Assembly: GCA_964252035.1 (NCBI GenBank)
Contig: OZ176206.1
Length of the DNA stretch: 64,000 nt
Direction: 5' to 3' (one strand)
From: Podarcis erhardii
Lineage: Eukaryota
The notes beneath the pieces were generated by a model. The model worked only from the letters and a program-made list of their open reading frames with translations. It did not search any database and was not told the DNA's origin. The position numbers were made by a program, and so were the translations under genes. Each line of letters opens with the position of its first letter. Position 1 is the stretch's first letter. Of this stretch, positions 1 through 24,999 are shown in pieces.

Positions 1-699
1 GGTCTTTGCTATGGCCCTCCTAAAATGGTGTGTTGCAAGGGAAATGTCAGGCAAACGCCTTTGAAATCCAACTATGAAACTTTAGCCCCATTTGAAATAT
101 CCTAGCATACCTTTGTGTAGATATTTCCACATAAAGACACATCTTGACCCTGTCCTGCTGTTTTCTCACACATGCACACCTGTGCTTTAAAAAAAATGGA
201 ATTGAGGATGCTTTCATACACAGTGTTGTCAAAGCTGTAAGGTTGCAGGAGATTTAAATGACCTGCAACTCCTTAGCCAATTGCTGGATAGCAAATAAGA
301 GCTAAGGAAGAGGGATTTACTCTGCACAGGTACCTCCCCTGCTCCATCATATTAATAAGCTCATCTGCAAGTTATTTCCCCTGCCCTCTCCTGGAAAAAC
401 CCAACGTCAGCAATTTAGAATAGTGGTTTTGTATGCCTAGGAGGAAGACAGTGGTGAGGTACTATCATTTCCGCCCCCTAGTGAAAATTGCAGCTTTGAG
501 AAGATTGCTCTGCACTCTGCACATGTTTAAGCGGCGCGTTCTCACGCTCCAACGAAACGTCTCTACCATCTTTGCGGCTCCAGTGTGCTACTCGAGGCAG
601 AACCTTATATTTCTCTGCTTTGGGGGACGGTTGTTTGCCGGAGAGAGGGTGGAAAGAGATTCGCTGGCAGTCGTGCGGGCGGTTGCTGATCGCAAGGCG

Positions 700-1603
700 T
701 CTCTCCCCGCCCCCGCCCCCCAAAAAGTCTTGGCCTCCGCGAACCGGAGTCAGCGGAGGGGCGCGTTGGAGGGAAGCAGGGCGCCGCTGCTCTTTGTCAA
801 GGGATTTGCGCTGCGACCTCCGCCCCAGGCGAAGGGGGCAGAGGAGGAGGGGGAGACCCAGACAAGGCGGGGGAGGGGTTGTTTCTCCCCAGGAACCAGC
901 AAGATTCCTTTTCTCCCCCGCGGACCAGGCTCAGCGCCCAGCCGCATTTCCCGCTGCTGAGCGGCCGGGTCCTTGACTGGCGGGGCTGGATTTCCGCGCC
1001 TCGATCCGCCCGTGGCCGTTGGCTTCGCCGAGCCCGCCTGGGGCTCACTAAGGCCGCCCCCATCCTACCTCCTCCCCGCTCCGCCTCGCCTCGCCTCGCC
1101 TGCTGGTCCCCGCCTCCTTCCTTCCTCCCTCCCCTCCCTCCCTCCCCTCCCCTCGGAGTTGGCAGCTCGGTGGCCCAGCCGGAATCTCGCAGCCGTTGGC
1201 GCTGAGGGCCGGAGCTCTCCTGCCGGAGTTGGGCTTCCCGGGAGGGGGGCGGACTGCTGCTCGGTCTCGCCCCGCCGGCCCTCCTCCAAGGGCGAGCAAG
1301 AGGAGCGGCCTGCCAGCCAGCCAGCCAGCCGTCGCGCGCTCTGCATCCCTCCATCCGAGCGAGCCTCGCCGCGCAGCCTTTTGTTCCCCCGGCAAGAAGT
1401 TTGTGCGCTGAGAAGGGCCGTGACAGCTGCAGCCCCGTTAAGGAGCACAGAAGAGGGGGCGGCGGCGGCTCCTGCCGCTCGCTTGACATGCAGCCCACGG
1501 CTCGGCTCGGCGGGGACGGCTGCCGGGGGAGGCGGGCCCCGCTCTTGCCGCCGCCGCGACGCACAAAAGGCTCCAACTAAACTTCCCTCCTGGAGAGCGA
1601 GCG

Positions 1604-1634
<31 letters not shown>

Positions 1635-2290
1635 GGAGAGAGCTCCGTCTGCGCGGCCCGAGCATGGTAGGAGCCGAGAGCCGCCCGGCGAGGACCCCGG
1701 CAGCCGGCTGTCCCGGCCCGTCCCCTGCGGGGGCGCCTCTGCTTCTGTCCGCCGGCTGCCGCCGCCCTTGAGCGAGGGAGGAGCGCCGAGCAGACTTCGC
1801 CACGAGATTCCCAGACTGCACGGGGAGAGCTGCCCGCCTCCCTTCCGGGGCCTCTGCTAGCGGTGCTGAACCAGCTATCCCGCCCGCCGGCCGAGGATGC
1901 TGGGCAGACTGGAGGCGCCCGACGTCGCCCGGCATGAAGAACTTCCTGCGCTGGGACCGCGAGGGATCTCCGCCGCCGGGCGCAGTCCGAGCCAGCCGCG
2001 CCGCGCCGAGGGGCCGACGAAGCAGCCTCTGCAAAGCGCAGTTCTGCCCGGGCATGGAGGCGCGCGGGAGGCCGGGCCTTTGTTCCGCCAGGAGAGCGCG
2101 CTCTGCGGCCGCCTTCCCGAGAGCTGGCCTTTTCCTCGCCGCCGCCGCTGCTGAGCTTCCCACCGGGGCGCCCTCTGGAAGAGGCTTTGTCGGAGCGGGC
2201 TGGAAGACTTGCCTTAAGGAGAGCAGCCCTACCGAGCAACCGGAGGAGGCGGAGGGCTTGCAAATAGCGATCGGCAGAAACGGCTTTATG
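700..2290. promoter_or_regulatory. CpG island, probable internal promoter of MACF1/KIAA0754-like transcript
   Basis: Visibly high GC and CpG density versus CpG-poor flanks; GC-box-like CCCCGCCCCCGCCCC near 706-722; no TATA; ends ~300 bp upstream of the 2604 ORF. Boundaries estimated by eye. Confidence 0.85.
1605..1632 (+). repeat. (GCAA)7 microsatellite
   Basis: Seven tandem GCAA units preceded by GCGA GCGA. Confidence 0.95.
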
Positions 2291-2603
2291 TGTTGGCCTT
2301 GGACTGCTAGCGTTTCCGCAGGAGCCATGGAATGCCTTGCCTCTTTCAAGGACTTCCACGGTGGAAGATGACTTCTCTCTGGAAAGCTCTGTAACTTCTG
2401 TGGAATACAAAATTGTGGCCTCCCAAGTGGTTATTAGGGATTTTCAAAAGACACCTTGCTCCACCATAACCTATTTCATTTTGCTTTGAATGGAGAGCTT
2501 GTGAGGCAGGGGAGGTTTTTTGTTGTTGTTGTTGTGGGACTCTTCTCTGCGGGGGTCCCCCCCCTTCTATTCTGTTCTGTTTTCTTTTATTGTTTTGAAA
2601 AGT

Positions 2604-5600
2604 ATGGGCAAGCCACTCAGCAGGCCTGACTGTTTAAGGCAGAGTCCTGCTTGCTTGGGGAAAGGAGAGGATGAGGATGGGTATATAGAAGACTGTTACG
2701 TCCCTCAGAGATCCATCTATGACACCATGAGGATAAATGAGCAAATTGATCAGGGGTCCAAGACTAGCCAGCCTTCCAAGAGTACCCTTGAAAAAGGGGA
2801 TGGCAGCACAATCTCTAGCAATGGAACTTTAGGGGCACCCAGTGTCTTTGAATCAAAGGCACCCGAGAGCAAAAAGTTAGACGAGAGGGTCATTTTTGAT
2901 GCCTTGAAACTTAGTAGTGATGTTTCCAAGTCAGCACCGGCACCCCCAAGGCGGTGGCCAAATCCAGAGAAGAAGGAGAATGTCAACAGGCGGTCATGGA
3001 AGTCCTTTATGCCACCCAATTTCCCTGAGTTTGCTGAGAGAATTGAGGCCTCCTTGAGTGAAGTCTCAGAAGCTGGAGTTTCTAACCCATCCTTGCAAGA
3101 GAAGCAGGAGTCCACTGCCATGTTGGCAGAGAGCCCTAGGCAGTCCGACCAGGGGGAATGCATGTCAGAGCCGTTGACCCTGGAGCACATTCCCAAACTG
3201 TCTGGAGTTCCAGAAATTCAGGAAGTGAAGCAGCTAAGTGAAGCCTTCTGTGAGTTGTCTCAGGATGAGTGCCAGCCTCTTCTGGGTCCAGAGGACATGG
3301 TAGTTGACCTGACCGGCGGCAGGCGGCGGGACCACAGGCTCTCGAGCGCCACGTGGCCAAGGGTGATGAAAAATGCCATCAGAGCAGGCCTTGGCAGTGG
3401 GCATCATGACACCTTGGAGGCAGACAACACAGACTGTGTCATAGAAACGGTGCCACTGTCTCCTTGCCTGAGTGAAGAGCTCCTGGACCCAGGAATGAGC
3501 ATTCTCATCGCCCCCAACCTCCGGGAAAAGACTGAGTCGGAGCTGAGGTTTGAGGAGGATGAGCGATTGATCATGATGGAGGCTGGGGAGGAGTGGGAGG
3601 AAGGCTTGCTGTCAGGGAAGGCTGCTGAGAAAAGAAGTTGTTACTTGACAGATATTTCTGAAGAAAAGGAACAATTAAGTGTTCCAGCCGTGACAGTTAC
3701 GGAAGCTGTAGAGAGTTTTGCTGGTGTCCAAGGGACCTCTAACCACCCATCTCACTGGCAAGAGCTGTGGGATGACTCACAGCTGCGAGCTGTCAACTCT
3801 GCTCCCGTTCCCCAGGAAACGCACCAAGACTTAAACGCTACTCTTGAGGAGGAGGAGGAGGAGGCTGGTGCCTGCAATGCTGAAGCTGTAGCAGCCGAAG
3901 TGGAAGAGGAGGAATTTGCTTCTGGCCTAGAAGCCTGTGCCAGCTCTCTTGCCCCAGAGCAGTTCTCTGACACGGATTCTGTGCAGATGTTCCTTGAACT
4001 AGAAAAGCTTTGCATGCTCGAAGAAGGAGGGAATGGAGTGGCTCCAGGTGATCTGGAGGTGCAGGATGATAATCAGTGTTCAGAAGGGCTGGACATGCAG
4101 AAGGACTTGGCAGGAGCCTCCCAGCCCTTGACTCACCTTGAAGTCAGCATGGCAGACTCTGCTGTGGTCTCAGATCTGGAAGACTTTGATGCCACATGTG
4201 GTTCTCAAGCAGTAAGTACAGCAGAAGCTACCCTTTCAGAGTGCTACTCTGAACGGGAAACTTCTGGTGACTCTGAAAAGGTGACGTCTTCCAGTCCTCC
4301 GCTTGAAAAAGATGCTGTATCCCAACAATCACTCTCATCCTTAGTTAGTCAGATAGAGGAGTATGGGGCAGAACTGTTGGCAGGTCATGACCCTGCAGAA
4401 AGCCAGAGGGTCAAAGGATTGTTGGACTTTGCCATGAGTGAACCTGTGGCTTCAGTTGATTTCCCTTGCTGTAGAGAACCACCTCCTTGCATCCATGTTC
4501 TTGCCATTGGCAGAGAAACTGAGCAGCAGCAAATGCAGCCTGTCATTTGCTATGAAGCAAAGGAGGTATCCCCGAGCCATGATGAACTTGCCACAACTGC
4601 TGAGGAGCTGGACTCCCAACCAGATTTTGACTTTGCAAAAGAGATGGTGAGTGCTATGGGGAAAGAGCTGCAGGCTTGCGATGAGCTCAACCCATCAGAA
4701 AGGACTGACTTCTCCAACTGGGATGTCCCAGAGCTGGTTTCTGAGGATGAAGTTGCAGAACTGGATAAAGAAAACCTCCTTTGTGGGGGCCACGTTAGTG
4801 ACATAGAGGATGTAGATAGTTCCTGGGTGCCTTCACAAAGTGAGTTTGTATTGCGGGACTCTGAGGAGCCTCTAAAACATGTAGGCTCCTCTGAGAACTT
4901 GAAGGCTGTGTGTCAACTTGAGCCTTTAACAAGGCTGCTGTGTGATGGAGAAGTGTCAGCGAGTGCAGCCCTTCTCCAGGAGGAAACACCAGAGGTAGTT
5001 GAGCAGGGAGCAGCAGCAGCAGCCAAAGGCAGCCCAGTGGAAGAGAAGAGATATTGCTTGGAACCTGGAGACTTGGAGTTCCTTTTTGGGCAGAGCAGGG
5101 ACAGTGAGATAACAAAGGATGAGGAATATAGTGCCAAGTTTGTTTGTACCAACTCACAAGCTTTTGTTGAAGATTTGTTTGCTGCACAGCCCAGTTCAGA
5201 AGACTTGGCCTCTTCTTTTGGAGAGGAATCTGCTTCTGTCAGTCCCCTCCCTAGTGACAAGGCTCTTGATGCCCCTCCAGATAGCCCAGAGGTGCTTGCT
5301 GACCCCTTTCCTTCTGCTGGAGTGGAGCCTTCTATCACTGATGGTCCAGAAGCTGTAACATGTTCCACCCTGCCTTTGCCATCCTCACTTGCTTCAACCC
5401 CAGAGGCAGAGGGGCCTGTTGTGGATGCTGTCTGCTTGTCCAGATATAAAGAAGTTTGTGGTCAAGATGGTCTTCCAGGAGTCACTTTGGAGCCCAAAGC
5501 AGAGGACCTGATACCATTCTCACCAAATGCAGAGGAGATATCCTCTGCTTCTGTGCCATTCTCCTTGGAAAATATGCCTCTAAGTAGAGAGGAACAGCCT

Positions 5601-5969
5601 GCTCTGGAAGAGCTGGCCAATGCCACAATGTCCACCTCCACCAAGGAGCCTGTTCAGGTGGCCCAAGCAATTAAAGGCCTTGCCATCTCTATGCCATTGG
5701 GTGCAGATGGTGTGCCAGAGCCACCAGAAGTTGGTTTCTCTCTGGCACCTGGAGCAGTGTGGGATACAGTTTGCAGCACACCACAGCTGCCCTCTTCTGC
5801 AGCACCTGAAAGTGGAGAGGAGGAGCTGACCTCTGCTGTGCCAGACTCAGAAAGTACCTCCTTTTCTTCCCTCATTGCTGAAGGGCCTCCTGCTGAAACG
5901 GATGGATTGGTTCCAGATAATGAGGTATTTGTTTCCCCTGGTCCCCACATGCTGCCATATCAGACATAA
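2604..5969 (+). CDS. KIAA0754: KIAA0754-like large single-exon ORF (1121 aa), probable alternative first coding exon of MACF1; acidic, mostly disordered
   Basis: ATG at 2604 in strong Kozak context (AGTATGG). MGKPLSRPDCLRQ...EDCYVPQRSIYDTMRINEQID...RRSWKSFMPPNFPEFAERIE matches my recollection of KIAA0754, known to lie within MACF1. TAA 5967-5969; internal in-frame donor GAG|GTATTT at 5924/5925. The ORF-track TTG start at 2520 is unlikely to be used. Confidence 0.88.
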   Translation: MGKPLSRPDCLRQSPACLGKGEDEDGYIEDCYVPQRSIYDTMRINEQIDQGSKTSQPSKSTLEKGDGSTISSNGTLGAPSVFESKAPESKKLDERVIFDALKLSSDVSKSAPAPPRRWPNPEKKENVNRRSWKSFMPPNFPEFAERIEASLSEVSEAGVSNPSLQEKQESTAMLAESPRQSDQGECMSEPLTLEHIPKLSGVPEIQEVKQLSEAFCELSQDECQPLLGPEDMVVDLTGGRRRDHRLSSATWPRVMKNAIRAGLGSGHHDTLEADNTDCVIETVPLSPCLSEELLDPGMSILIAPNLREKTESELRFEEDERLIMMEAGEEWEEGLLSGKAAEKRSCYLTDISEEKEQLSVPAVTVTEAVESFAGVQGTSNHPSHWQELWDDSQLRAVNSAPVPQETHQDLNATLEEEEEEAGACNAEAVAAEVEEEEFASGLEACASSLAPEQFSDTDSVQMFLELEKLCMLEEGGNGVAPGDLEVQDDNQCSEGLDMQKDLAGASQPLTHLEVSMADSAVVSDLEDFDATCGSQAVSTAEATLSECYSERETSGDSEKVTSSSPPLEKDAVSQQSLSSLVSQIEEYGAELLAGHDPAESQRVKGLLDFAMSEPVASVDFPCCREPPPCIHVLAIGRETEQQQMQPVICYEAKEVSPSHDELATTAEELDSQPDFDFAKEMVSAMGKELQACDELNPSERTDFSNWDVPELVSEDEVAELDKENLLCGGHVSDIEDVDSSWVPSQSEFVLRDSEEPLKHVGSSENLKAVCQLEPLTRLLCDGEVSASAALLQEETPEVVEQGAAAAAKGSPVEEKRYCLEPGDLEFLFGQSRDSEITKDEEYSAKFVCTNSQAFVEDLFAAQPSSEDLASSFGEESASVSPLPSDKALDAPPDSPEVLADPFPSAGVEPSITDGPEAVTCSTLPLPSSLASTPEAEGPVVDAVCLSRYKEVCGQDGLPGVTLEPKAEDLIPFSPNAEEISSASVPFSLENMPLSREEQPALEELANATMSTSTKEPVQVAQAIKGLAISMPLGADGVPEPPEVGFSLAPGAVWDTVCSTPQLPSSAAPESGEEELTSAVPDSESTSFSSLIAEGPPAETDGLVPDNEVFVSPGPHMLPYQT

Positions 5970-7740
5970 AATTACTTTTTTTGTAGGAAGGGAGTTGGGG
6001 AGGAAGCGAGGAGTTAATCCATAGTTGACTGACTGATGTGATTTGGAGTACAAAGCATGCCTGACTTTTTCTCCCTTTTGTTAAAATTTGGGTTCTCCTT
6101 CCCTTTGAAAGGGGGTTACATTTTGTAGGCATATTTAATGGTCTTGATAGAAACAGTGTTGGGTTGGTGGGTTTCTTTTTCTTTTTCTTTTCAGGTGTGG
6201 GGAGGGTTTCAAACAAGAACAAACCTGTCATTATCTTGCTTACGTAAAAATATTCTTGCCACCACCAATGTCTTGAACTGACTTATTCAAGTAGCATTAT
6301 GTTCATGCGCTTAGAAGCAAATTATACATTTTCTTCTGAAAGATTGTGATTAAGTGTGGGTAGCTGCAGAGCTCATAGATGGGAAAATGTGTTGCTAAGA
6401 GGGAAATAGTATAAGGCAAATTCCAGCTAACAACATTACATAAATGATAAAAACCAACCAACTGCCTAGTCAAGGTTCTTTCAAATCCATAGAGAAGAAA
6501 AGAAGTTGCTGAAAACTTTTTATTTAAATCTCCAAGTAAAGAAGGGGTTTGGAAAAGAGAAGCTTTTGTGCCAAGTCTGTTTGCAGCACCAAACGTCTAT
6601 AAAAGGGCATTGTTTTCTTTTGGATACTGATTTTGACAGTTGTCAACCAAGCTAAGCTAGTTTTTTGTACTTTTTAAACTGTCATGACGTTGGTTTTTCC
6701 CCCCTGCCTAGGAACTTGGCTTGGTTGCAATTTCTCACGCTTCAGACAGTTGCACATTTGAAAAACAAGAAAAGCAGAAGTAGCCAGAGGCTTGAGAAGG
6801 GCTATGATGTAGTGTTCAATTCACGTGTGGAAAACAGTCTCCAACTGTGGGCAGAAGGCAGAGTTTTTCTCAGTGAAAAAATGCAGCACCCACAGCCAAG
6901 ACTGTACAGTTCAGACCTGTAATTAGGAAGAAAGGTGGAGGGGGGGGAAGCAGGGGATGCCAAGCTAAGCCAAACTGACATGAATTATCGCTCTGGGTTT
7001 ATTACAGTCTGTCCAGCTGAGTCTGAGGAGAGAGAGCTATTTGAGGAGAGAGAGCTATTTGATAGAAAACATTATCAGTCCTATGGTGCCCAGAGTGGGA
7101 GATATTTGCTCAACACCCCAGGGTCAAAACAGCCAGGGAAGTATATGGAAGGTGCTCTTAGCTGTTGCCATGGTTGGTTCTACAGGGGAGAAGAGAAGCT
7201 ATGAGGGGTTATGGGGCATTTCACACATTGCCAAACTGTTGTGCTGCTAGGTATGAGATAGGATCTCCCACTTTTTAATATGGTGCAAAGCAGCTGTGAG
7301 CCCCCAAACAGGATGGTTGGAACTGCACTAGGGAGAGAGTGTTTAGCTGCTGCCACTTACTCGACCATCTCTTGTTTTCCTGGTCTAATCCTCCATTCTC
7401 ACTTTAGCTGTGTGATGATGGGGAACGGCCAAGTACATTAGGCAAGAAGCCATGACTTCTCCTGGCTTTCTGATTGGTGTGTCTGCATGATACATTTATT
7501 GCAAGTGTGTGTGTGTGTTGCATTTGCACTTGGATAAAATATAAACCAGCTGTTAGGTAGGAGAAAGAGGTCAGCAGGTTTACCATGAAGAATGGGAACA
7601 GGATACTAGAAAAGAGTCTTGAGAGAAGCATCTTGTAAATGAAAGCCTGGTAGCATCATTAGGAGGGCAGGGAAGCAGAGAATAACAAACAGATGAGTTC
7701 TGTTTATTTTCTGGGTAATTCTGCAGGACTTGCTTCCAAA

Positions 7741-7947
7741 TTCATTCATTCATTCATTACATTTATATCCCACCTTTCTCCAGGAAGCTCAATATAGCCT
7801 ACAAGCTTCTCCCATTTCTTAATCACAACAACCCTGTGAGACTGAGAGTGAGTGGCTGGCCCAAGACCACACCCAGTGAGCATCATGGCTGAGTGGGGAT
7901 TTGAAGCCTGATTTCCCAGCACTCTAACCACTACACCACACTGACTC
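7741..7947 (-). mobile_element. tRNA-derived SINE (family A, MIR/CORE-like body)
   Basis: Reverse strand reads tgtggtgtagtggttagagtg...ttcaaatccccactcagccatga...cacagggttgttgtg with a (GAAT)n tail; related copies at 25321, 45421, 48498. Confidence 0.75.
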
Positions 7948-8199
7948 CTGTGAATAGGAACACGGACTGGCATTCTCCACCCCAAACACACGCACATTTA
8001 GTTTCTCTGTTGGGCTAACCCAAATGTCACAAAATGGTACAGAAGCTTTTAAGTTCGCCAAAACTTTTCATTGGTCTAGATGGGAAGAAGGTACTTTTGT
8101 CAAGCCATCCATTTCTGCATCTGGTAAGAGTCTTAAGATGAAGAGTGAGAAGAGGTAGACCCCCCCCTTTTCTCCCCTCACATATTTACTGTCTAAAAA

Positions 8200-8330
8200 T
8201 GGCCCTTCCCAGTGTAGCACCATCCAGATTTTTTGAACTACAGTTTGGCTGTGCTGACTGGGGCTGACGGGAGTTGTAGGTCAGTGTGTCTTGAAGGCGC
8301 CATGTTGGGGAAGGCTGGTGTGAGGAAAAG
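8200..8330. mobile_element. Fold-back (palindromic) MITE-like element, degenerate copy
   Basis: ccttccca...ccagat...aactaca / gggagttgtagg...ggggaagg arms; same family as 18286, 24558, 25000. Confidence 0.6.
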
Positions 8331-8812
8331 GGCCACATGCTGGCCCTCCTATGCAAGGCAGTTAGTGTCTGTCCTCCCTTTTCTTTTGCCCTCCAGTCTT
8401 TCCTCCTCCTGCTGCTTTTGCTTCTCTGAATCAGGGAAAGGTTTGCGCCTTTGTCCAAGTGAGAGCTAGCCAGCCAGCGCTCTAGCATCCTCTCCGCGTT
8501 CTGTATTTGAAGCTCTAAGCTATGCTTCCAAGTATTTTCTGCCGAGGCGGTTGTTAAGGCTGGGTTTTGCGTTTTTAAGCCTCCCCCACTAAACCTGTCT
8601 CTGGTTTCTGGATCATTCCCACCCAAATATGGCAGCTGTTCCTGATTGCGGGTGGGGGTGGGGATTTTGCTTGAACAGAGCGAAATGCTTTGGAGTCCTC
8701 TCCTGTGTTCGTTTTAAAAATAAGTTTTGTATTTGAGGTTATGGCCGGAGCGTGTAGGAAGAGGTGGCGGCATGTCCTTTCCGAGAGCTTGCATGCCTGG
8801 CTTATCGGTCTG

Positions 8813-8814
<2 letters not shown>

Positions 8815-8852
<38 letters not shown>
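8815..8852 (+). repeat. (TG)n microsatellite
   Basis: Uninterrupted TG run. Confidence 0.95.
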
Positions 8853-8854
<2 letters not shown>

Positions 8855-10739
8855 CTGGCTGCTGTTGGATGTAGGAGGGCCCTTTCCATTTATATCTATC
8901 TATAAAATATATAATATAAAATAAGCAGTCCCAGCAGAAGGGCTGGGTGAGTCGTTTGCTGTTATGTTGCCATCAATCCTTCTTATGGCAGAATGGCTCT
9001 ATAGCTCTGGACAGCATCTTCATTTAATATCCTGGCATGTTCCCATTTCTGGAGACAAGTTGCTGAATGTTGCAAGGGAGGAAAACATTTCCCCCTGACT
9101 TTTCCAAGCTTAGATTCTTGCTGCCTTGCATCACAGCTGTCTCGCTCAGGGCCCTCCGTAAACCATAGGGAAGTTTGGGCCCAGTTTTGTTTGGAAGTGG
9201 CTGCTAAATCTTTAGCTGGCTGCAAAGCTTTAGAAATGTGTTGCTGTTCCTCATTTTCTTACGAACAGAGCAATTTATTGCTTCAGTTTGGTGGTTTTTG
9301 CTGCTGATTTACTTTTCATGTTCCACTTTCCCCTGGGAGCAAAGGGCTCCTTAAAGATCACCAAAAACTACCTTGCCAGGTGTTTTGGACTACAACTCCC
9401 ATCATCCCTCACCATTGTCTATGTTGGCAGGAGTGGGAGTCCAGAGCACCTGGAGAGGCTGTGAATGAGTATGAGCGTGCTTTTTCTTTCTCCCATTTAT
9501 CATGACACCCCTATGAGGTAGGGCAAACTCACAAATAGTGGTGATTCAGGGCTATTGGATGAATAAGAGACTTCGTCCTGGGAGTCTTGTGTTCTAGCAA
9601 TTACTCAGCAGCTTAAAAAAAAACCAGCAACCAGGTACTAAGAAATTGCGGGGGGGGGGCATGTTGCGTAATGCACTGCTTGAAATTTGAATGTTTTTTC
9701 AGCTCTGGACCTTAATACATTCGGTCATGGTTAAATGCCCTATGGGATTTAATCACACATCTAATTTTTTTTGTTATAAAACAAAAGTCTGTAGTTTGAA
9801 GTAATTGTGTTTAAATGCCACAGCAGATGAATTCTACCACTTACACCTGCACAAATCATGCATTTTAATATGATATTTACAGAATTGCTGTGTGTTGACT
9901 TGATCTTTTGGAAAGGCACCTGATAAATCTTGTTAATAAAAAAAAGGATTCTCCCAATGAAGCATGAGAAAGAGGCTCTTCTGGGTGGCGTATTTTGGCA
10001 GGATCCCAGCAAGACAAAGCTCTCTGTTATAACTGAACCAATGTCTGTAGCTTTCGAGTAACACAAAACTCCTTGCCTAAACCAGATGTGCGGAACCTCA
10101 ACTTGTTGCTGAAATACAACAACTCCCACCATCCTTGGTCTTCAGCCATGCTTTGTGGAGCTGATGGGAGTTGCAGTTTGGCAACATCTGGAGGGCGAAA
10201 GGTTCCTTGCACCTGGTCTCAGTGATATGCCAATAGATATTGGCCCAATAAGAAGAAGCATTAAAGACAACTTTTTGTTTTAAAATGGAGGTCCAAAGGA
10301 AGGCTGCCAGGATGTAGGAAGATGCCTAATCTTAAATCAGACTATTGGTCCATATAGCCCAGGAGGATCTACACAACTGGCAGCAGGTCTCTAGGGATTC
10401 CTTCCCACCCCTACTTGGATACAGTGAATGTATTTATTCTGTCTTCTGTCCCAAGCAGAAAACATTTGCTGCCTCCGAAGTAAGGTGTGCACAGAACTGT
10501 CTCTTGCAGTGCATGATGGCAGCCTTCGTGCAAAGAGTAAGAACCAGTCCAGGGGCTGCATGCAGCTGGTGTGGCTCGAAGGGCATGGTGGGATGGGAGG
10601 CTCTTCTGCCCTTTTTCTCGCCTCCTTCTGAGGAGAGGAGTTTGCTCAAGGGCAGCTACCCTTTGAGTGTCACTCTCAGTGTGGCCTCTGACCACTTTGG
10701 GTGCTCTTCACACAGCTGTCTTGCAGGGCAGTGGGGAGG

Positions 10740-10770
<31 letters not shown>

Positions 10771-10974
10771 GATGATGATATAATATATTTATACCCTACC
10801 CATCCAGTAGGGTTTCCAGCCACTCTGGGCAGCTCCCAACAGATTAAATGCAATGCCTCTTCCTTTAATTTGCCACCCTGGGCAACTGCCCTGTTTTCCT
10901 CCTGTAAATACAGTATGCCCGGAGATGCTGGGGATTGAATCTAGGAGCTTCTGCATGCAAAGCAGTTAATTATA

Positions 10975-11215
10975 AGAAGAGCCTTGATAGGCCAGAGGAA
11001 CTGACTAATCCAGCATCCTGTTCTCCGGCTGGCCAGCAAGATGGGAAGCCTGGACCTGAATGCAGTGATGGAGGCAGAGCATAGCCGTTGTGGCTAATTG
11101 CCATTGATAGTCTTCTCCTCTGTGAATTTGTCTAATCTTTTTAAAGCCATCTAGGTTGGTGACTATTCCTGCATCTTGTGATAGGTGCTCTTCCATGCAG
11201 CTACAGCCCTTCCCA
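10975..11215 (-). mobile_element. CR1 LINE 3' end fragment
   Basis: Minus-strand translation SQDAGIVTNLDGFKK resembles the CR1 ORF2 C-terminus, followed by a CR1-type 3' tail. Confidence 0.65.
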
Positions 11216-13721
11216 TAAGTTGAATCAATGTGAGCTGAAGGAGAAGGGACTGTGTGCATTTTAAAAGGAAGTTCTGGAAGAGAAAGGGCAGCAAGAGGAG
11301 CGGGAGGCAGCTGGGAAGAGAATGAGGTGCTAGACCAATCAAACAGGAATGATATGGTCAGGTGGGGGGGGGAGGGGAAGGCGCTGGAATGACAGTTGAT
11401 GTTTCTCCAGGACAGCATCAAACCTTCAGGTGTTTATTGACTCACATAACTCCTTTGTGTTCATTAAATAAAAAAATAGTAAATCCAGCCCTCTATAAAG
11501 AATTTTGAAGATCACAGTGAAAATTTTGCGCACAGTGAGCCAGTGAGGCAGAAGGGATTGGGATGCAGGTTTAGTAAACTCATCCTTTGCTCTGTCCCTA
11601 CAAAAGGAAGTTGCAGCATAAAGTATATCCTCCTTAATTTCCATCTGCCAGCTTGGCTTTGGGCCTCTGCTGTTTAGCAACCATCCAGGGCAAGCAGTCC
11701 TATGTCATCTGCCACTGTGGCTGCTGTTGATGGTTCCTTGGAGTTTGCCCAGCTCTGTGTGAAGCAGGCCACTGTTCTTCCCATTCCACAGGGAGGGAAC
11801 CAAGTGACATGAAAGAGCAACATGCCGTGCGCTCTATCATGGTATATTATCAGAACTCCCAGAAACACACAGGGCTTGTCGTCACTGAGATCAGTTTACA
11901 TGTGCAGCTGGGAGTCAACAAGCTGAGAATCAGGCAGTCCAAAACATATCTAAACTGGTCCTTAGTGGGCCAAGGGTCTCTTTCCAGGGATGCTTTAGCT
12001 AGACAGTGAGCAGTTTGGATGAGATTGCCTTCCTGAGCCTTGAATAGGCAGTGCAAATTCCAACATGGAAGCATCTTTTGTGTAGGAATTTGTGTTCATA
12101 TGAATCTCTCTTGATTCCAGCCATTGGATTCTTCCCTACCTGTGATCATATGTATTCCTGGGAGTTGCAGAGGTTTGGCGTTTCACGTGCCCACATGGCT
12201 AAATGGCCTCTTCTGCTGTAGTGTTCCCAAGTGAAGGAGCTACCTGCCTTCCCCTTTTTCTTAATTCCTCCTCTGCTACCATTTCCCCTTCACAGGAGCC
12301 TCCCTTTCCTGGGAAGGAGAAATGGCAGCTCTTTGTCAGAGTCTTGTCTGTCATCAGGTACTTTTCAGAAGATCCAGGGCTCCCTGATAGGAACAGCCTT
12401 CTCCTGATTTTATCTCGCACCTTCTTCGCTCCCTTTATTTCTAAACCTTGCTTTGCCTTATGGAGCTTTTTTTTTCTCACAAGGTTGTGGGAAGATCTTG
12501 GAGATTGAGCAATTGCATTCGTCTTTCTTTTGTCTTTTTGAGTGATAATGCAGCAAACTTTCCGTATGTTTGTGATACCTTGTGCATGTGGAAGGCAGTG
12601 TATAGGAAGCAGTTGTGCAGCTGGTGTGAACATGCTGTGGAATGTGGTGCTCTCTCCAGTGGTGTTGAGAGAGGAAGGTGGATAAGTTTTTCTCCAAGAG
12701 AGAGAGTGAATTATGCCTGTCAAGCTTACAGAGGAGTGTGGGTGTGTAGCTAATCTGGCTTTTCTGGTGCAGGAGGTGGTGGTGGAGAGAGATGTAGCTG
12801 CTGGCCACTTTGCCTTCTAGGGCCACATGTTGTGTTTCAGTACAGCCTCATTTGTTGCCATGACTTTTCCTCCCAGCTCTAAATGCAACAGAGCTAACAC
12901 TCTTCTTGTCTATCAGGTTGGCTGGCTGGTTTTTACAGAGATACCCTTTATAGCTCAGCTGCACACAGTATTTTCTTTCTTTTTGCTTGTGTTTAAAACC
13001 TTTTTCCAGAAGTGAAACAAATCTCCAGATTCCTCTCTGCAAATACCTTTATATCCTCAGCTCAAGATACTGATAGCCAATTAGTAAGCTAGTCCATTCT
13101 CATTAACTTGCTATGTCTGCAAGCTTCATTCATGGGTTGGTGTGATCTGTAAATGAAGTCTGGCATTCATATGTAGGAGATGCTCTCAGCCACAGCTGGA
13201 GACAGAATGAAATGGTTAGCCAGTAGCCTCCAGGGATTGCCCTAAGGCAGCCTTCATCAACTGGGTGTGCTCCAGATATTTTGTACTGCAACTCGCATCA
13301 GCTCAGCCAGCACTGCCAATATTCAGGAATGATGGGAATTGTTGTCAAAAAGTCTTGGGGGTACAAGGCAGGCCGAGGGTGCCCGAAAGTACTGAGCAGC
13401 TTCTTGCCAGTCTGGTGTTAGATTTAGATCAATGTTGTGTGCTGACAGAGACCTGGATTCAAATCCCTCGATAGCCTTGATGTTCACTGACAGCCAGTCA
13501 TCTTGACCTTGGGACATTAAGAATCTCCACTAATGCATCATCTATTTGTTGTTAGGATAAAATTGGAGTGGGGCTAACCATGTACAGTATGCTGCCCTGA
13601 GTTCCCGGCCTGATAAAACTATAGCAAATAAAAAGGCTAAGTAAGACAACTGATGATTTGTGATGGAGGTTGACATCCTTTGTCTCTCCCTCCCCCATCT
13701 CCCGCTTCCATGTTTCCTCAG

Positions 13722-13883
13722 ACATTCCAGAAGGAGCAAGTTGACCCCCTTCAGGCAAAACTGCAGCAAGTCAATGGGCTCGGACAGGGACTCATCCAGA
13801 GTGCGGGAAAGAATTGTGACGTCCAGGGCTTGGAACATGACATGGAGGACATCAACACCCGCTGGAACACCCTCAACAAGAAG
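13722..13883 (+). CDS. MACF1: MACF1 exon, spectrin repeat ([10 protein letters not shown]...WNTLNKK)
   Basis: ctcag acceptor, AAG|GTGAG donor; 162 nt, phase 0-0. Confidence 0.95.
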
Positions 13884-15106: not shown

Positions 15107-15277
15107 GTGGCGCAGAGGATTGCACAGCTGCAGGAAGCCCTGTTGCATTGTGGAAAGTTCCAGGATGCCTTGGAGCCTTTGCTGAGCTGGTTGGCCGACA
15201 CAGAGGAGCTCATCTCCAACCAGAAGCCGCCATCTGCTGAATATAAAGTAGTGAAGGCTCAGATTCAGGAGCAAAAG
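15107..15277 (+). CDS. MACF1: MACF1 exon, spectrin repeat (VAQRIAQL...AQIQEQK)
   Basis: gtag acceptor, AAG|GTGAG; 171 nt, phase 0-0. Confidence 0.95.
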
Positions 15278-15798
15278 GTGAGGAGTTGGAAGCCAGGGGA
15301 CCTTGAACTCACAGAGCACAGCTGGCTGGCAGGACCCTCCATGGCCTCTCTCTGCTCTGGGCACTCAGCTCCACCAGCGGCCCCAGGTATCCCCAGTTGA
15401 CAGGAAAGGTTTCACTTGCTTTCCTTTTGGCAGACGGCTTCTATCTACCAACTGTGCCATGTCAAATAAGCAGGAGAAGGAAGGAAAGAGGTTGGTAGCT
15501 GGTGAGCTTTGCAGAACAGAGAGGGGACAATATAGGGGGCAGACACCCAACCTTTAGTGTGGAGACAGCCCCCACTAGGAATGGCATAAAAGGCAGCCTT
15601 TGTTGGGTGAGGTCTGGGAACTTGAAGTTGATGGTGGTGAGTGAAAGGGGAGAAAGAGGGCACAGTTAAAAGAGTGGTAGGAGGGAAATGTGAGTTTAGC
15701 AGAGGGGGAGCTCTGGGGACTGTTGGCCTTACTGAAAGCAGAAGGGTAATTCTTTCCTTAGCAGAATAATTATCACTTTCTAATACTTTATTCCAAAG

Positions 15799-15965
15799 CT
15801 GCTCCAGCGTCTCCTGGATGACCGGAAAGCTACTGTCGAGATGATCCAAGCAGAGGGTGGGAGAATAGCTCAGTCTGCTGAACCAGCAGACAGGGAGAAG
15901 ATAGTTGCCCAACTGGAGAGCCTTGGAAGCCACTGGGCAGGACTTCTCAACAAAGCTACAGCCAG
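15799..15965 (+). CDS. MACF1: MACF1 exon, spectrin repeat ([10 protein letters not shown]...KATA)
   Basis: ccaaag acceptor, AG|GTAAG; 167 nt, phase 0-2. Confidence 0.93.
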
Positions 15966-16086
15966 GTAAGCTACAAGGCCTGTAGGATGCAAGCTTGTCT
16001 GTTGTAATTTAGCACTGAAGCAGGAGAAAGTGACCTTTGCTTTGCGCTCTCCTCTCCCAGCGAAGTATACTTTGATGTTCTTTTGG

Positions 16087-16273
16087 TAAGCTGCCTTATA
16101 CTGAGTCGGACCATTGGTCCATCTAGCTCAGTACAGGCTACTCTGATTGGCAGCAGCTCTCCAGGGTTTCAGGCAGGGAGCCTTTCCCAGCCCTGCCTGG
16201 AGATGCTGCTGGGGGCTGCACCCCTGGGACCTTCTGCATGCACAGCAGATACTCTGCCATTGAGCTGTGGCCC
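16087..16273 (-). mobile_element. tRNA-Ala-derived SINE (family B)
   Basis: Reverse strand gggccacagctcaatggcagagtatctgctgtgcatgcagaaggtcccagg resembles tRNA-Ala(TGC); body and tail shared with the 55895 copy. Confidence 0.8.
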
Positions 16274-17519
16274 TTTGCTCTGGTAACCCTGCTGTTTCAT
16301 AACACGAGTTATTTTATGAACTGTGACTGCCTGTGCATTGCACACAATAACTTTGCAAAACAAGATGTTGTCTCATGCCTGTGCTCTGAATGAAATCACT
16401 CTGAACTTCTGAGCCATATGGCTTCTGAATGTGGTTAGCAGGACTGAAGAATACAAACTGTGTCCACAGGATGGGATGCACTACTTGCAGGAGAGTCTCT
16501 TGCTTGTAAAACTCACACACACAAAAACCCTATTGATCCTGTGAGTCCCAGAGCACCATGAGCAGCACGTGTGGAACACGCTTCTGTGCCACAGTATTTC
16601 TTTCGTCTTTAAAATATTTATCATCTGCCCTTCACTTGAAGATGCCAAGATAGAAATATGTGCAGTATAAACCAAAATCAAACTGTAAGATTAAATCGGC
16701 ATAAAACAAAAATACAGAATTCAGATACCAATTAAACCAGCAGTGGTAGCAGATAACCTTTGGCCATCCAGGGCCAGTCCAGGATGTTTTAATGTCTGTG
16801 GAGGGGAGTCCTCAAGACCTCCCTTGCAGATGTAAGGAAAAGTGGGAGGTCCCCTTTCAATGAATGGTAGCTGTGAAAGAACAGATAACAGCTGTGGTTC
16901 ATTTCAGAGGAGGCAGTCAGTGCAGGAGAACTTTATGTTAGTGGATTTTGACCTGTGCATCAGCTCTGTGTTACTCTCTGCTGCCCTTTAGCTTACCCCC
17001 AAGCTGCTACCTCACCCTCCTTCTTTCAAGTACTTGGGGTTGGGATGGAGTGTTTCTTCCAAACCCAGTTTATATTGGCACACCTGTGGGCTCATCATTA
17101 CGCATGACTGCATGCATACAGCCTTCCCACATATGTGAAGCAACCCACAGACAAATAAAAGGGCTAAGGAACCATGTTCTGGGTATAGAGAGCTACAGGT
17201 TCCCTCCCTCTGTCCCTTGAAGTTTCTGTTTTGCTTTGGGGAGGGGGCTGTGTGTGTGTGCGAGAGAGAAGCTTTTCTGCACAGCTCTGGAATTAAATGG
17301 AAGTGTAAAATCCAGGGAAAGGGTTATCATTAATATTTTTTAAACCTGGCAGTTGCATTCCAGCAACTCCACAGAGAGTCAAGTGCAACATCTGTGAAAA
17401 TGGCCTCTATCAGCAATTTCTTCAAGCTGTGTGTCTCTTCCCCCACCTCCTGGCTTTCCCACATTTCCTAGATAGGTTTCATTCACATGGAGAAGGGGGA
17501 ACCCCACTCCTCTTCAGCC

Positions 17520-18250
17520 CCACCATGTCTAAACATGAAATTTCAGACCATCAGATCTTTTGCATGGGGCTACAAAAATTACTGATATTTTCACTGAACC
17601 CACAATTCCCTTCTTGGTCAATCATCACCACTTTAGGCCCCATCAGTGTATATATCATTAAGGTTTTGGGGTTGTTTTTGTTTTTGTTTTTGTTGTTGTT
17701 TTGCTTTGCTTTGCTTTGCTTCATGCATCTATCACTTTATTCATATATTCATTGAACTGCATTTCTCATTTTGTTACCCCCTGCCCTGTTTTGGAGACAT
17801 CCTTTTGGAGCTCTTCACAGCCCGCTTGGTTGTTCATCATACTGAATACTTTGGTGTCATCCACAAACTTTGTCAGCTCCCTTCTCACTCCTGTCTCCAG
17901 ATCATTCCTGAACAAGTTCAGGGGCACCATCAGCTCCAGTGCACAGATCCTTCAGGAACTTTACTGCATGCTTCCTTCCTTCCATTGTGAGAACTGTCTG
18001 TTTATTCCCACACTCTGTTTCCTGTTCTTTAACCAACTGCTGATCCTTAAGAGGATCTGTCCTTTCACCCTGTGACTGCTGAGTTTATTCAGAAGTGTTT
18101 GGGGAGAGAGACCTTGTTAAAAACTTTTAGGGAGCTCAACTATGCAGTGTCTGCCAGACTACATGTTTCAGCAATCTTATTGGCACTCTCGAACTCCGAA
18201 AGGTTGATGAAGCAGGCTCTTGATACATTAATCCTGTCTTCAAAAAAGGG
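17520..18250 (-). mobile_element. CR1 LINE reverse-transcriptase fragment, decayed
   Basis: Minus strand encodes LLNKLSSHRVKGQILLRISSWLKNRKQSVGIN and FVDDTKVF...CEELQKD, matching CR1 RT (catalytic FADD-type motif), with frameshifts. Confidence 0.85.
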
Positions 18251-18285
18251 GGGTGAAGTTAATGACCCTAGAGGCTCTTGCCCAT

Positions 18286-18372
18286 CCTTTGCCAAGATGA
18301 TGCCCTCCAGATGTTGGCCTACTACTCCCATCAGCCCCAGCCAACATCTGGAGGGCATCACCTTGGCGAAGG
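18286..18372. repeat. Near-perfect inverted repeat, 33-bp arms, 21-nt loop (fold-back family)
   Basis: Arms 18286-18318 and 18340-18372 differ from perfect complementarity at 2 positions. Confidence 0.92.
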
Positions 18373-18588
18373 CTGTTCCAGCCAGTCCTGGAAGTCTCTT
18401 AAAATGCTTTCTAGCAGAATCCCTGGTGAAAAAGCTGAACCTGGTTATCTGCTCAACTTTCTCAGGATAAATACTCTGGGTGCTCATTTCATTCTTTGTT
18501 ATTGCAGGAATGGCAAAGTAGCCTCATCTTCTGCCTCGCTCCCCCCCCCCCCATTGTTGCTGATGGATTTGTTTTTTTCTTGCCACAG

Positions 18589-18748
18589 GCAAAACCAGCT
18601 GGAGGAGATCCTGGTTTTGGCCAAGCAGTTCCACGAGACATCAGAGCCCATCTCTGACTGGCTGTCGGTGACTGAGAAGAAACTGGCCAACTCGGAGCCC
18701 ATTGGGACTCAGACGGCCAAAATCCAGCAGCAGATAAGCCGGCATAAG
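18589..18748 (+). CDS. MACF1: MACF1 exon, spectrin repeat (QNQLEEIL...ISRHK)
   Basis: acag acceptor, AAG|GTGGG; 160 nt, phase 2-0. Confidence 0.95.
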
Positions 18749-19852
18749 GTGGGCAAAGGGTTGCCAAGGAATTGTGAAATGTGGGGGTGACGGGGGAGCA
18801 CTGTGCAGTAGGCACTTCAGTAAGAATAGCGGCTGCTGTGGAACCTGGGTACCTGAATAAGATTTGGGGGTGGGGGTGGGGGTGGGGGAGGTTGGAAACA
18901 TGCATGTCATAACGGAACAATCCTTAAGCCAAGTTGAGTTGGTTGGAATTCAGAATGAAGAGTCTCATGGTTTGTATCCAAGCAAAATGTTGAGCCTCAG
19001 AACATGCAGGACAAGACTGCCAATGACTACTACCCGTGATGACTTATGTTCTGCTTTCACTGTCAGACATAGTATACCTCTGAATAGCAGGTGTGGGAAT
19101 CAGAGACAGGTAGAACGCTGATACACTTGGGTCCTGCCTGCAGGCTTCCTACAGGCATTCATTTGGCCAGAATAAGAGCAGGATACTGGGCTATTGGACT
19201 GATCCGGCAGCAGGGTTGTTCTTAGGTTTTTAACTTTAGTAGTTCCTAGCATATTGCCCATATCACTAAATCCTAGAATCCTGCACTTGGTGCAATCCTA
19301 GATGGGTCTGCTTGGAATAAGGTCCATTGGGTTTAGTGGGACATACTCCCAGCTAATTGTGTATAGGATTGCAGCCTTAGCGTGTTTGAACACTTGAGTG
19401 TTGTCACGTCAGCTCAGCCAATCGCAAGAAGGAATCATTGTTGGTGTCAATCAGGGATCTCTGGGTAGGAAGAATCCTGGCTCATTAGAAGGGAATTGTG
19501 TGGGAGATACACCCCACCACACACACCTTTTCCCAAATTCAGTAACTTTTCCTCTTTAAGCTATGAAAATAGCAGCCACAGCTATAACTCCTGTTCATGA
19601 GATTACCTGGCCTCCAGAGAAGAATGAAACAAAACTCCCATCTCTCACTTTTCTTTATTTAAACAATTTATTTCATATATGTTATTGCCCTCGTGGGTGG
19701 ATATTTTTACTTTGAGTTTGCATGATCATCAGACACGCTCATTTCTCAGTTTTGTTTTAGATTTGTTTCCCGTTTATTCCATTTTCAGTCATAAGTTTCT
19801 GTCTGCTTGTTTTGTGTTCCCCCTTCTCTTAAACCATCTCACGGATCTCCAG

Positions 19853-20179
19853 GCCCTCGATGAGGAGATAGAGAGTCATGGCTCAGCTGTGGCTCTGGCA
19901 GTCAACACTGGACAGTCCCTGGCCTCCTTGAGCTGTCAGGCTGAGCAGGCCTCGCTGGCTGAGAAGCTTGACCTGCTTGAGTCCCGGTATGCAGAGGTTT
20001 GCGACCGGTGTGGCCGGAAGGCTGCCCTTCTTGACCAGGCCTTGTCCAACGCCCGGCTCTTTGGGGAGGACGAGGTGGAGGTGCTCAACTGGCTGGCTGA
20101 GGTTGAGGACAAGCTCAGCTCAGTAGCCGTCAAGGATTACAAGCGGGACATCCTGCAGAGGCAGCATGCCGACCACCTG
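19853..20179 (+). CDS. MACF1: MACF1 exon, spectrin repeat (ALDEEIESH...QHADHL)
   Basis: ccag acceptor, CTG|GTACT; 327 nt, phase 0-0. Confidence 0.93.
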
Positions 20180-20209
20180 GTACTGACTCCTTTTCCCATC
20201 TTTCATGAT

Positions 20210-20210
<1 letters not shown>

Positions 20211-20258
<48 letters not shown>
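20211..20258 (+). repeat. (TTA)n microsatellite
   Basis: Tandem TTA run about 30 nt downstream of the exon donor. Confidence 0.93.
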
Positions 20259-20260
<2 letters not shown>

Positions 20261-20926: not shown

Positions 20927-21011
20927 GCCTTGAATGATGAGATTGTGAACCGCAAGAAGAATGTAGACCAGGCCATTAAGAACGGGCAGGCCCTTCTGAA
21001 GCAAACCACAG
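20927..21011 (+). CDS. MACF1: MACF1 exon, spectrin repeat (ALNDEIVNRK...KQTT)
   Basis: ctag acceptor, G|GTAAG; 85 nt, phase 0-1. Confidence 0.95.
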
Positions 21012-24978: not shown

Positions 24979-24999
24979 GTAAATCTCTTGTCCTGCATG

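What the first reader, a model, noticed from the sequence alone, without database searches (positions are those of the whole stretch)
2604..13883. KIAA0754-like giant exon can fuse in frame to the MACF1 spectrin rod
Seen: GAT AAT GAG|GTATTT at 5924/5925 is phase 0 after 1107 codons, and the next MACF1 acceptor (13722) is phase 0. The join gives an open frame of 3321 aa (3390 with the four optional exons) ending in EF-EF-GAR-GSR-SKIP. Inference: a spectraplakin isoform with the actin-binding and plakin head replaced by a ~1100-aa acidic disordered segment, i.e. a microtubule/EB-binding tether with a different anchor. KIAA0754 as a MACF1 alternative first exon has, as I recall, been annotated in mammals, but its function is poorly described.
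Basis: partly seen in the sequence, partly recalled or inferred. Interest (0 to 1): 0.72.

Follow-up and report, generated by a model that had tools for sequence, protein, structure and literature searches.

The report
Known short MACF1 isoform's first exon
The 1107-codon open frame is the conserved alternative first coding exon of a short form of the cytoskeletal linker MACF1; RNA from a closely related lizard shows it spliced exactly as predicted. The form is already in protein databases (human "isoforms 6/7"), but nobody has studied what it does.

Summary
ATG 2604 opens 1107 codons that end at GAG|GT (5924|5925). The acceptor AG|13722 is in phase 0. A homologue-guided chain of 42 AG/GT exons runs without a stop to 61111. 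It gives 3358 aa, or 3321 aa without the 37-aa exon 57775-57885, and ends in two EF-hands, GAR, GSR and SKIP.

Transcript contigs from two independent studies of a close relative (about 2% diverged) run colinear from about 1157 to 5924. They then continue with 28 letters that match only 13722-13749. So the junction exists in RNA, and the transcript starts in a CpG island (501-2500).

The donor is conserved in place and phase. 97 stand-alone database models read on into the intron from a valine (GTN) codon at this point. Ten fused models, from gecko, snake, birds and human, carry the same [11 protein letters not shown] join.

Fused full-length models with this head also exist in a marsupial, a frog, turtles, snakes and teleosts. 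A paralogous head sits on short dystonin models at the paralogous rod exon, and a hagfish protein starts with the same motif. The scan had already found the dystonin counterpart in this genome (note s1-263151).

The head is acidic (pI 4.1) and predicted disordered, with an invariant MGKPLSRPDCL start. That start may be a lipid anchor, but this is untested.

Verdict: real, ancient and already annotated, with function unstudied. Low novelty.

The parts
501..2500 (.). CpG island, taken as the internal promoter of the short isoform
   Evidence: GC 0.59-0.72 and CpG o/e 0.78-0.93 in 500-nt bins, against 0.00-0.36 in the bins on either side. Transcript coverage starts inside it.
1157..2603 (+). Unspliced 5' UTR, about 1.45 kb; the transcript start lies near 1150-1200
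   Evidence: X1 contigs cover 1157-1513 and 1501-5924 colinear with the DNA, with no joint at the AG at 2601-2602 (tables 5 and 8). The first mate of the stranded reads lies on '-', so the RNA is on '+'. The UTR holds 10 upstream ATGs and an in-frame stop at 2502.
2604..5924 (+). Head coding sequence: 1107 codons, orthologue of the KIAA0754 / MACF1 'isoforms 6/7' first exon
   Evidence: Residues 1-11 and most of 27-46 are invariant in 35 vertebrate sequences. pI is 4.13, with 220 D+E against 74 K+R. AF2 mean pLDDT is 46.9, with only isolated helices.
5925..13721 (+). Intron, 7797 nt, GT...AG
   Evidence: No homologous exon lies inside it (tblastn). Read depth is zero at 6000-6399 in four runs. 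The first AATAAA comes only at 9935.
13722..13883 (+). First shared MACF1 rod exon, phase 0-0; it enters a spectrin repeat mid-way
   Evidence: It matches Pfam Spectrin profile positions 47-94 of 105. The 28 loose letters of the transcript contigs match here only.
15107..46899 (+). 32 further rod exons encoding spectrin repeats
   Evidence: Colinear tblastn at 70-98% identity to the fused homologues, with splice sites and phases checked. 14 Pfam spectrin stretches are found in the colinear homologue P0124.
43584..43676 (+). 93-nt in-frame intron without a stop; keeping it would add 31 aa
48157..48819 (+). Two exons (48157-48319 and 48665-48819), each encoding one EF-hand
   Evidence: Pfam EF-hand_1 at E 2.9e-7 and 5.4e-7.
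49900..53795 (+). Two exons (49900-49974 and 53678-53795) encoding the GAR (GAS2) microtubule-binding domain
   Evidence: Pfam GAS2 at E 2.5e-20 on 53678-53794. The GAS2 domain of P0124 (residues 2945-3013) maps here.
57775..57885 (+). 37-aa phase 0-0 exon, probably a cassette exon; leaving it out gives 3321 aa
   Evidence: Lagopus isoforms X2 and X4 differ by 37 aa.
60858..61114 (+). Last coding exon: GSR repeats, SKIP (SxIP, EB-binding type) motif and the stop codon

Best explanation
Positions 2604-5924 are the coding part of an alternative first exon (about 1157-5924) of MACF1.

Shown here:
- The exon is transcribed from its own CpG-island promoter inside a large MACF1 intron.
- Its conserved phase-0 donor at 5924 is spliced to the phase-0 rod exon at 13722.
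- The product is a protein of about 3320-3360 aa: a 1107-aa acidic, disordered head followed by the distal part of the spectrin rod, two EF-hands, the GAR domain, GSR repeats and an SxIP motif.
- It has no actin-binding calponin-homology domain and no plakin domain.
- It is the lizard orthologue of the database form called MACF1 isoform 6 (UniProt O94854 type).

Inferred, not shown:
- The C-terminal half binds microtubules and EB proteins as in full-length MACF1.
- The head supplies a different anchor. The invariant MGKPLSRPDCL start looks like an N-myristoylation site (G2, S6) with nearby cysteines (C10, C17) that could be palmitoylated. That would tie the microtubule-binding end to a membrane rather than to actin.
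- The short conserved helices and motifs (residues 27-53, 90-105, 126-146, 249-253, 284-321, 455-468) would be partner-binding sites.

The confidence of 0.9 is for identity and splicing. I put the lipid-anchor mechanism at about 0.35-0.5.
For: - Sequence and frame.
- Orthology: (E=0; source names 'KIAA0754 homolog' and 'MACF1, isoforms 6/7').
- RNA junction: table 7. Contigs of X1 (study P1) and X5 (study P2) stop matching at 5924 and go on with 28 letters. These letters match only 13722-13749, with 2 synonymous differences and 0 matches expected by chance.
- No read-through: depth is zero at 6000-6399.
- Promoter: the CpG island, with contigs starting at about 1157.
- Donor conservation: 97 models read on from a valine (GTN) codon at this point, and 10 fused models carry [11 protein letters not shown].
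- Fused full-length models across vertebrates.
- Domains.
- Disorder of the head.
- Invariant N-terminus.
- Precedent for G2-K3 myristoylation: ARF6 (PMC7044312) and the rules in bioRxiv 10.1101/2021.06.22.449375.
Against: - The RNA evidence comes from a close relative (57% of sampled 31-letter words shared, about 2% divergence), not from the window's own species. It rests on assembled contigs, one per run. The raw RNA reads were too few (12 and 45 laid) to show the join.
- The 5' UTR is long (1447 nt), GC-rich and holds 10 upstream ATGs, which would hinder translation.
- For myristoylation, K3 is an unfavourable residue and position 7 is R, not the K that GK-starting substrates rely on. No paper reports lipidation or any function of this head.
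- Exon 13722 starts in the middle of a spectrin repeat, so the first repeat is incomplete.
Confidence: 0.9

Rival explanations
1. The open frame is mainly a separate nested gene (stand-alone KIAA0754, 'isoform 7'). Its transcript reads through the donor, adds 14 codons (to the stop at 5967-5969) and ends inside the MACF1 intron.
For: Most database models are of this stand-alone kind: 97 read into the intron. UniProt lists a mouse 'isoform 7' of 1115 aa (P0095).
Against: Depth is zero at 6000-6399 in all four runs, and both contigs leave the DNA exactly at 5924. No AATAAA or ATTAAA occurs until 9935. The sequence after the donor diverges quickly between species, as an intron does. Many stand-alone models are simple ORF calls on genomic DNA.
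Confidence: 0.07
2. The giant exon is an internal cassette exon of full-length MACF1, entered through the AG at 2601-2602. It would insert the acidic segment into the rod rather than replace the head.
For: A pyrimidine-rich tract (2560-2598) followed by AG lies just before the ATG.
Against: The transcript contig is colinear across 2602 from 1501. An in-frame stop lies at 2502. Every full-length homologue begins with MGKPLSRPDCLR, and no model has upstream MACF1 residues before it.
Confidence: 0.02
3. The spliced transcript exists but is poorly translated or not translated, because of the 1.4-kb UTR with 10 upstream ATGs. The conserved open frame would then act mostly through another transcript start or only in certain tissues.
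For: (upstream ATGs). The X5 contigs begin only at 2208, which would fit a second, nearer start.
Against: The protein sequence is strongly conserved, with residues 1-11 invariant across 35 vertebrate sequences including teleosts, and a hagfish protein starts MGKPLSKPDCL. The ATG has a good context, A at -3 and G at +4. Papers report peptides under O94854 in human samples, but the one I checked is shared with MACF1.
Confidence: 0.05

Closest known systems
Human and mouse MACF1 'isoforms 6/7' (UniProt O94854, gene synonym KIAA0754), and the RefSeq/Ensembl fused models in birds, snakes, gecko, turtles, wombat, Xenopus and teleosts
   Same: The head is orthologous (the first 160 aa are 80-100% alike among tetrapods). 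The donor has the same place and phase. The acceptor exon is the same ([11 protein letters not shown]). The C-terminal EF-EF-GAR-GSR-SxIP part is the same.
   Different: Beyond residue 470 the head is poorly conserved; this lizard is 62% identical to a skink over the whole head, with 42-47% for full-length alignments to birds and turtles and 51-57% over the conserved 42-55% in mammals. Mammalian heads are longer and carry proline-rich repeats. No read-through 'isoform 7' form was seen here.
Short dystonin (DST) models with the paralogous head (for example Phrynosoma P0167, Haliaeetus P0165, bats); earlier scan note s1-263151 in this same genome
   Same: They start MGKPLSRPDCLRQNPPCVGKG... and are 50-54% identical over the first 160 aa. 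The head is joined to the paralogous rod exon (VFQKEEIEPLQ). They lack the actin-binding and plakin parts.
   Different: The dystonin head is only about 370-430 aa and the total length is 2600-2700 aa. It belongs to a different gene.
ABD-less MACF1 isoforms in the literature: MACF1c and MACF1-4 (review PMC4914211)
   Same: They lack the calponin-homology actin-binding domain and keep the rod, EF-hands and GAR.
   Different: MACF1c keeps the plakin domain and the whole rod. MACF1-4 has plectin repeats at its N-terminus. Neither has this head. The 2016 review lists six isoforms and not this one.
BPAG1a3 (dystonin isoform 3) with an N-terminal myristoylation motif (review PMC3352950)
   Same: It is a spectraplakin isoform defined by an alternative first exon that carries a conserved lipid-anchor motif.
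   Different: BPAG1a3 keeps the actin-binding and plakin domains. Its short N-terminal exon is, from my memory, unrelated in sequence; I did not test this.
Dystrophin short isoforms from internal promoters (Dp260, Dp140, Dp116, Dp71); from general knowledge, not tested here
   Same: An internal promoter with a unique first exon is spliced into the spectrin-type rod. The product lacks the N-terminal actin-binding domain but keeps the C-terminal binding modules.
   Different: Their unique first exons encode only a few residues, not an 1100-aa head.

Membership tests
MACF1 isoform 6 type (KIAA0754-headed short MACF1) | First coding exon orthologous to KIAA0754, starting MGKPLSRPDCLR | tested here: met
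   E=0 for the best hits; 252 hits in all; 107 of the 120 listed hits start with this 12-mer.
MACF1 isoform 6 type (KIAA0754-headed short MACF1) | Phase-0 donor at the conserved ...(V/I)PDNE / ...LNSxE position | tested here: met
   97 read-through models continue from a valine (GTN) codon there, and 2 models end exactly there.
MACF1 isoform 6 type (KIAA0754-headed short MACF1) | Splicing of that donor to the rod exon [11 protein letters not shown], seen in RNA | tested here: met
   loose ends at 5924 in X1 and X5, two studies; unique match at 13722-13749. The RNA is from a close relative, not the window's own species.
MACF1 isoform 6 type (KIAA0754-headed short MACF1) | Open frame through the rod to EF-hands, GAR, GSR and SxIP | tested here: met
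   (42 exons, no stop, 3358 aa).
MACF1 isoform 6 type (KIAA0754-headed short MACF1) | Own promoter inside the MACF1 gene | tested here: met
   CpG island at 501-2500, with transcript contigs beginning at about 1157. The exact start was not mapped.
Stand-alone KIAA0754 ('isoform 7', intron read-through) | Transcript continues past the donor and is polyadenylated in the intron | tested here: inconclusive
   Depth is zero at 6000-6399 and no poly(A) signal occurs before 9935. But depth was low and only four runs of a relative were laid.
Canonical spectraplakin architecture (ABD, plakin, rod, EF-GAR) | N-terminal calponin-homology actin-binding domain and plakin domain | tested here: not met
   The head has no Pfam family at E<=1. 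AF2 gives no globular fold. The chain goes straight from the head to the rod.
Canonical spectraplakin architecture (ABD, plakin, rod, EF-GAR) | Spectrin rod followed by two EF-hands and a GAR domain | tested here: met
N-myristoylated proteins (NMT substrates) | Gly at position 2 and Ser/Thr at position 6 | tested here: met
   MGKPLS; M1-L11 are invariant in 35 sequences.
N-myristoylated proteins (NMT substrates) | Small uncharged residue at position 3; for GK-starters, the S6-K7 pair | tested here: not met
   Position 3 is K and position 7 is R. The preprint 10.1101/2021.06.22.449375 says K3 is less favourable and S6K7 is then crucial. The hagfish homologue does have S6K7. ARF6 shows that GK-starters can be modified (PMC7044312).
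N-myristoylated proteins (NMT substrates) | Myristate actually attached | not testable with these tools
   This needs metabolic labelling or mass spectrometry.

The most novel reading that the evidence does not exclude
The MGKPLSRPDCL head is an ancient vertebrate module, older than the MACF1/dystonin split and already seen at the start of a hagfish protein. It would be lipid-anchored (N-myristoyl with or without S-palmitoyl) and rich in short binding motifs. It would turn both spectraplakins into actin-independent tethers between a membrane and microtubules, a second and so far unstudied mode of action for the family.
Probability: 0.3. Interest if true: 0.55.

Novelty: already known. Interest (0 to 1): 0.25.

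Why it matters
For annotation, the nested 'KIAA0754-like' open frame in this lizard should be modelled as the first exon of a short MACF1 isoform, not as a separate gene. Many database models make that mistake by reading into the intron.

Biologically, the isoform and its dystonin twin are conserved across vertebrates, with an invariant 11-residue start. Yet they are missing from the MACF1 isoform review I checked, and none of the 36 papers that mention KIAA0754 tests a function. MACF1 and DST knock-outs and disease variants in the distal rod or C-terminus also hit these short forms. N-terminal (ABD or plakin) alleles spare them. That difference could matter when phenotypes are interpreted.

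Tried and rejected
- Pfam on the head gave no family.
- AF2 on residues 1-480 with a 35-sequence alignment gave mean pLDDT 46.9 and only isolated helices. I therefore ran no fold search, since a low-confidence model gives meaningless matches.
- ORFs inside the intron 5970-13640 showed nothing coding, and tblastn with the fused homologues found no exon there.
- My first automatic chaining of tblastn hits dropped four exons. I replaced it with junction-by-junction refinement and hand checks.
- I considered whether the window is Anolis. It is not: Anolis H9G7B1 is only 53% identical in the head.
- Paper searches for KIAA0754 with myristoylation, for the N-terminal peptide, and for MACF1 internal promoters or short isoforms found no functional study.
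- The search of earlier findings by place found nothing near the finding.
- I sent no joined (spliced) protein to any search tool. Exons were searched one by one by reference. The frame check streamed the translation exon by exon and kept only counts and exon-end residues.
- A human partial protein (P0072) appeared among the hits. I used it neither as a query nor as a guide; only its junction string was listed by the pattern count.
Full report
**1. The observation**

The ATG at 2604 opens 3321 nt (1107 codons) without a stop, ending ...GAT AAT GAG at 5924. GT follows at 5925-5926. If read through, the frame would stop 14 codons later, at 5967-5969. AG at 13720-13721 precedes an exon of 162 nt (13722-13883; TFQKEQ...NTLNKK) that ends before GTGAGC. 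Both boundaries are in phase 0.

**2. The downstream frame**

- Two fused homologues returned by the protein search (Lagopus P0124, 3241 aa; Pelusios P0134, 3238 aa) map colinearly on the + strand from 2604 to 61111. They have no hit between 5925 and 13644.
- I refined each junction against these guides and checked the unclear ones by eye. The result is 42 exons, every intron GT...AG, with consistent phases, no stop, and 3358 aa.
- Exon-by-exon Pfam scans give spectrin pieces, one EF-hand each at 48157- and 48667-, and the GAS2/GAR domain at 53678-53794.
- The last exon carries the GSR run and SKIP, followed by the stop.
The frame check streamed the translation exon by exon and kept only counts.

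**3. What the head is**

- The head has 252 homologues at E<=1e-3. The best are squamates (62% identity to a skink), followed by turtles, birds, mammals, coelacanth and frogs. [quoted passage not shown]
- 107 of the 120 listed hits begin with exactly MGKPLSRPDCLR.
- In a 35-sequence alignment that includes teleosts, M1-L11, most of 27-46, and blocks around 92-103, 126-146, 250-253 and 290-316 are invariant or nearly so. Beyond about residue 470 there is little conservation.
- The head has no Pfam family. Its pI is 4.13, with 220 acidic against 74 basic residues.
- With the alignment, AlphaFold2 gives mean pLDDT 46.9 and only isolated helices (38-49, 141-149, 311-336, 458-472). It is a disordered, acidic segment with short conserved motifs.

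**4. Is the donor conserved?**

Yes. In 97 database models the protein continues past ...(V/I)PDNE (sauropsids, coelacanth) or ...LNS(N/H/D)E (mammals) with a valine, that is a GTN codon, and then diverges. That is what an ORF call reading into an intron looks like. Two models end exactly at the donor. Ten models are fused and all carry the same join:
- gecko: GLVPDNE|[12 protein letters not shown], identical to the one predicted here;
- garter snake: ...|QFQKEQ;
- turkey, ptarmigan, quail and a flycatcher: ...|LFQKEQ;
- a human partial record...|MFQKEQ.

**5. Is the join made in RNA?**

- No RNA run of the window's own organism was offered. Organism A holds 51-57% of the sampled 31-letter words of the exon, about 2% divergence.
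- I laid window:400-6399 on two raw RNA-seq runs and two contig sets of organism A.
- In X1 (study P1) a 4439-nt contig is colinear with 1501-5924, and a second contig covers 1157-1513. In X5 (study P2) contigs cover 2208-5924.
- In both runs the contig leaves the DNA exactly at 5924 and goes on with the same 28 letters. These match the window only at 13722-13749, with two third-position differences and none expected by chance.
- So the 5924|13722 junction exists in transcripts in two independent studies.
- No joint was seen at the AG at 2601-2602, so the exon is a true first exon with an unspliced 5' UTR.
- Depth is zero at 6000-6399 in all four runs, so no read-through was seen.
- The few stranded raw reads have their first mate on '-', as expected for RNA from the + strand.
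- Limits: this is a relative, not the same species. There is one contig per run. The raw reads were too few (12 and 45) to show the join themselves.

**6. Promoter**

Positions 501-2500 form a CpG island (GC 0.59-0.72, CpG o/e 0.78-0.93), against 0.00-0.36 in the bins on either side. Transcript coverage begins at about 1157. The 5' UTR is therefore about 1447 nt, 65% GC, with 10 upstream ATGs and an in-frame stop at 2502. The main ATG has A at -3 and G at +4.

**7. How widespread, and how old?**

A search with the first 160 residues inside a long query found fused full-length MACF1 models (3120-3424 aa) with spectrin, EF-hand and GAS2 domains. They come from birds, a wombat, Xenopus, rattlesnakes, tortoises and many teleosts.

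The same search found short dystonin models (2600-2700 aa) that start MGKPLSRPDCLRQNPPCVGKG..., and a hagfish protein that starts MGKPLSKPDCL. The dystonin head (about 370-430 aa) is joined to VFQKEEIEPLQ..., the paralogue of the exon at 13722. The whole arrangement (head exon, phase-0 donor, same mid-rod acceptor) therefore seems older than the MACF1/dystonin split.

I confirmed the dystonin counterpart only with database proteins, not on that piece of DNA.

**8. What is known**

- The form is in databases. The source names say 'isoforms 6/7'.
- A 2026 proteomics paper assigns the rod peptide [13 protein letters not shown] to both Q9UPN3|MACF1_HUMAN and O94854|K0754_HUMAN (PMC13167194). In this window that peptide lies in the exon at 15107, just after the join.
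- A 2016 review of MACF1 isoforms lists six forms and not this one (PMC4914211).
- Of 36 papers that mention KIAA0754, all are gene lists, GWAS or expression tables.
- No paper holds the N-terminal peptide or links KIAA0754 to myristoylation.

**9. How it most likely works**

*Shown:* an internal promoter and a unique first exon give a MACF1 that lacks the actin-binding and plakin parts. It keeps the distal rod, the EF-hands, GAR, GSR and SxIP.

*From established knowledge of the family:* GAR and GSR bind microtubules, and SxIP binds EB proteins.

*Inferred:* the head provides another anchor or set of partners.
- Its start has G2 and S6, with cysteines at 10 and 17. This is the pattern of dual myristoyl and palmitoyl membrane anchors.
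- K3 is unfavourable and position 7 is R rather than K. Work on GK-starting substrates finds S6K7 important, although ARF6 shows that such starts can be modified (PMC7044312).
- I put the lipid-anchor idea at about 0.35-0.5.
- The exon at 13722 corresponds to positions 47-94 of the 105-position spectrin profile, so the first repeat is incomplete. That is common for internal-promoter isoforms of rod proteins such as dystrophin (general knowledge).

**10. Verdict**

The feature is a correctly recognised, real and ancient isoform that is already annotated. It is of modest interest only because its function remains unstudied.

Noticed in passing
window 1157-2603: The 5' UTR of the short isoform is about 1.45 kb, 65% GC and unspliced, with 10 upstream ATGs (uORFs of 4-145 codons). 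X5 contigs begin only at 2208, so a second, nearer transcript start is possible.
   Followed up: partly
window 43584-43676: A 93-nt GT...AG intron between two spectrin exons is in frame and has no stop. Keeping it would add 31 aa.
   Followed up: partly
window 39183 / 39189: Two acceptors lie 6 nt apart. The bird guide fits 39183 and the turtle guide fits 39189, so this may be an alternative 2-aa choice.
   Followed up: no
window 1800-2199: A few stranded reads in X24 lie in the opposite orientation (first mate on +) inside the CpG island. This may be weak divergent or antisense transcription; the depth is very low.
   Followed up: no
P0196 (UniProt H9G7B1, Anolis carolinensis, 3298 aa): This record is labelled 'Dystonin' but maps colinearly on this MACF1 locus at 83% mean identity in the rod. 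It carries a MACF1-type head with a different, probably mispredicted start. The name is likely wrong.
   Followed up: partly
window 1068-1156, 1589-1643, 2508-2542: Short simple repeats lie in and near the CpG island (CCTC-rich, (GCAA)n, (TTG)n). The reads tool skipped them.
   Followed up: no
P0165-P0195 (dystonin and hagfish proteins): Short dystonin models carry a paralogous MGKPLSRPDCL head joined at the paralogous rod exon, and a hagfish protein starts MGKPLSKPDCL (S6K7).
   Followed up: partly
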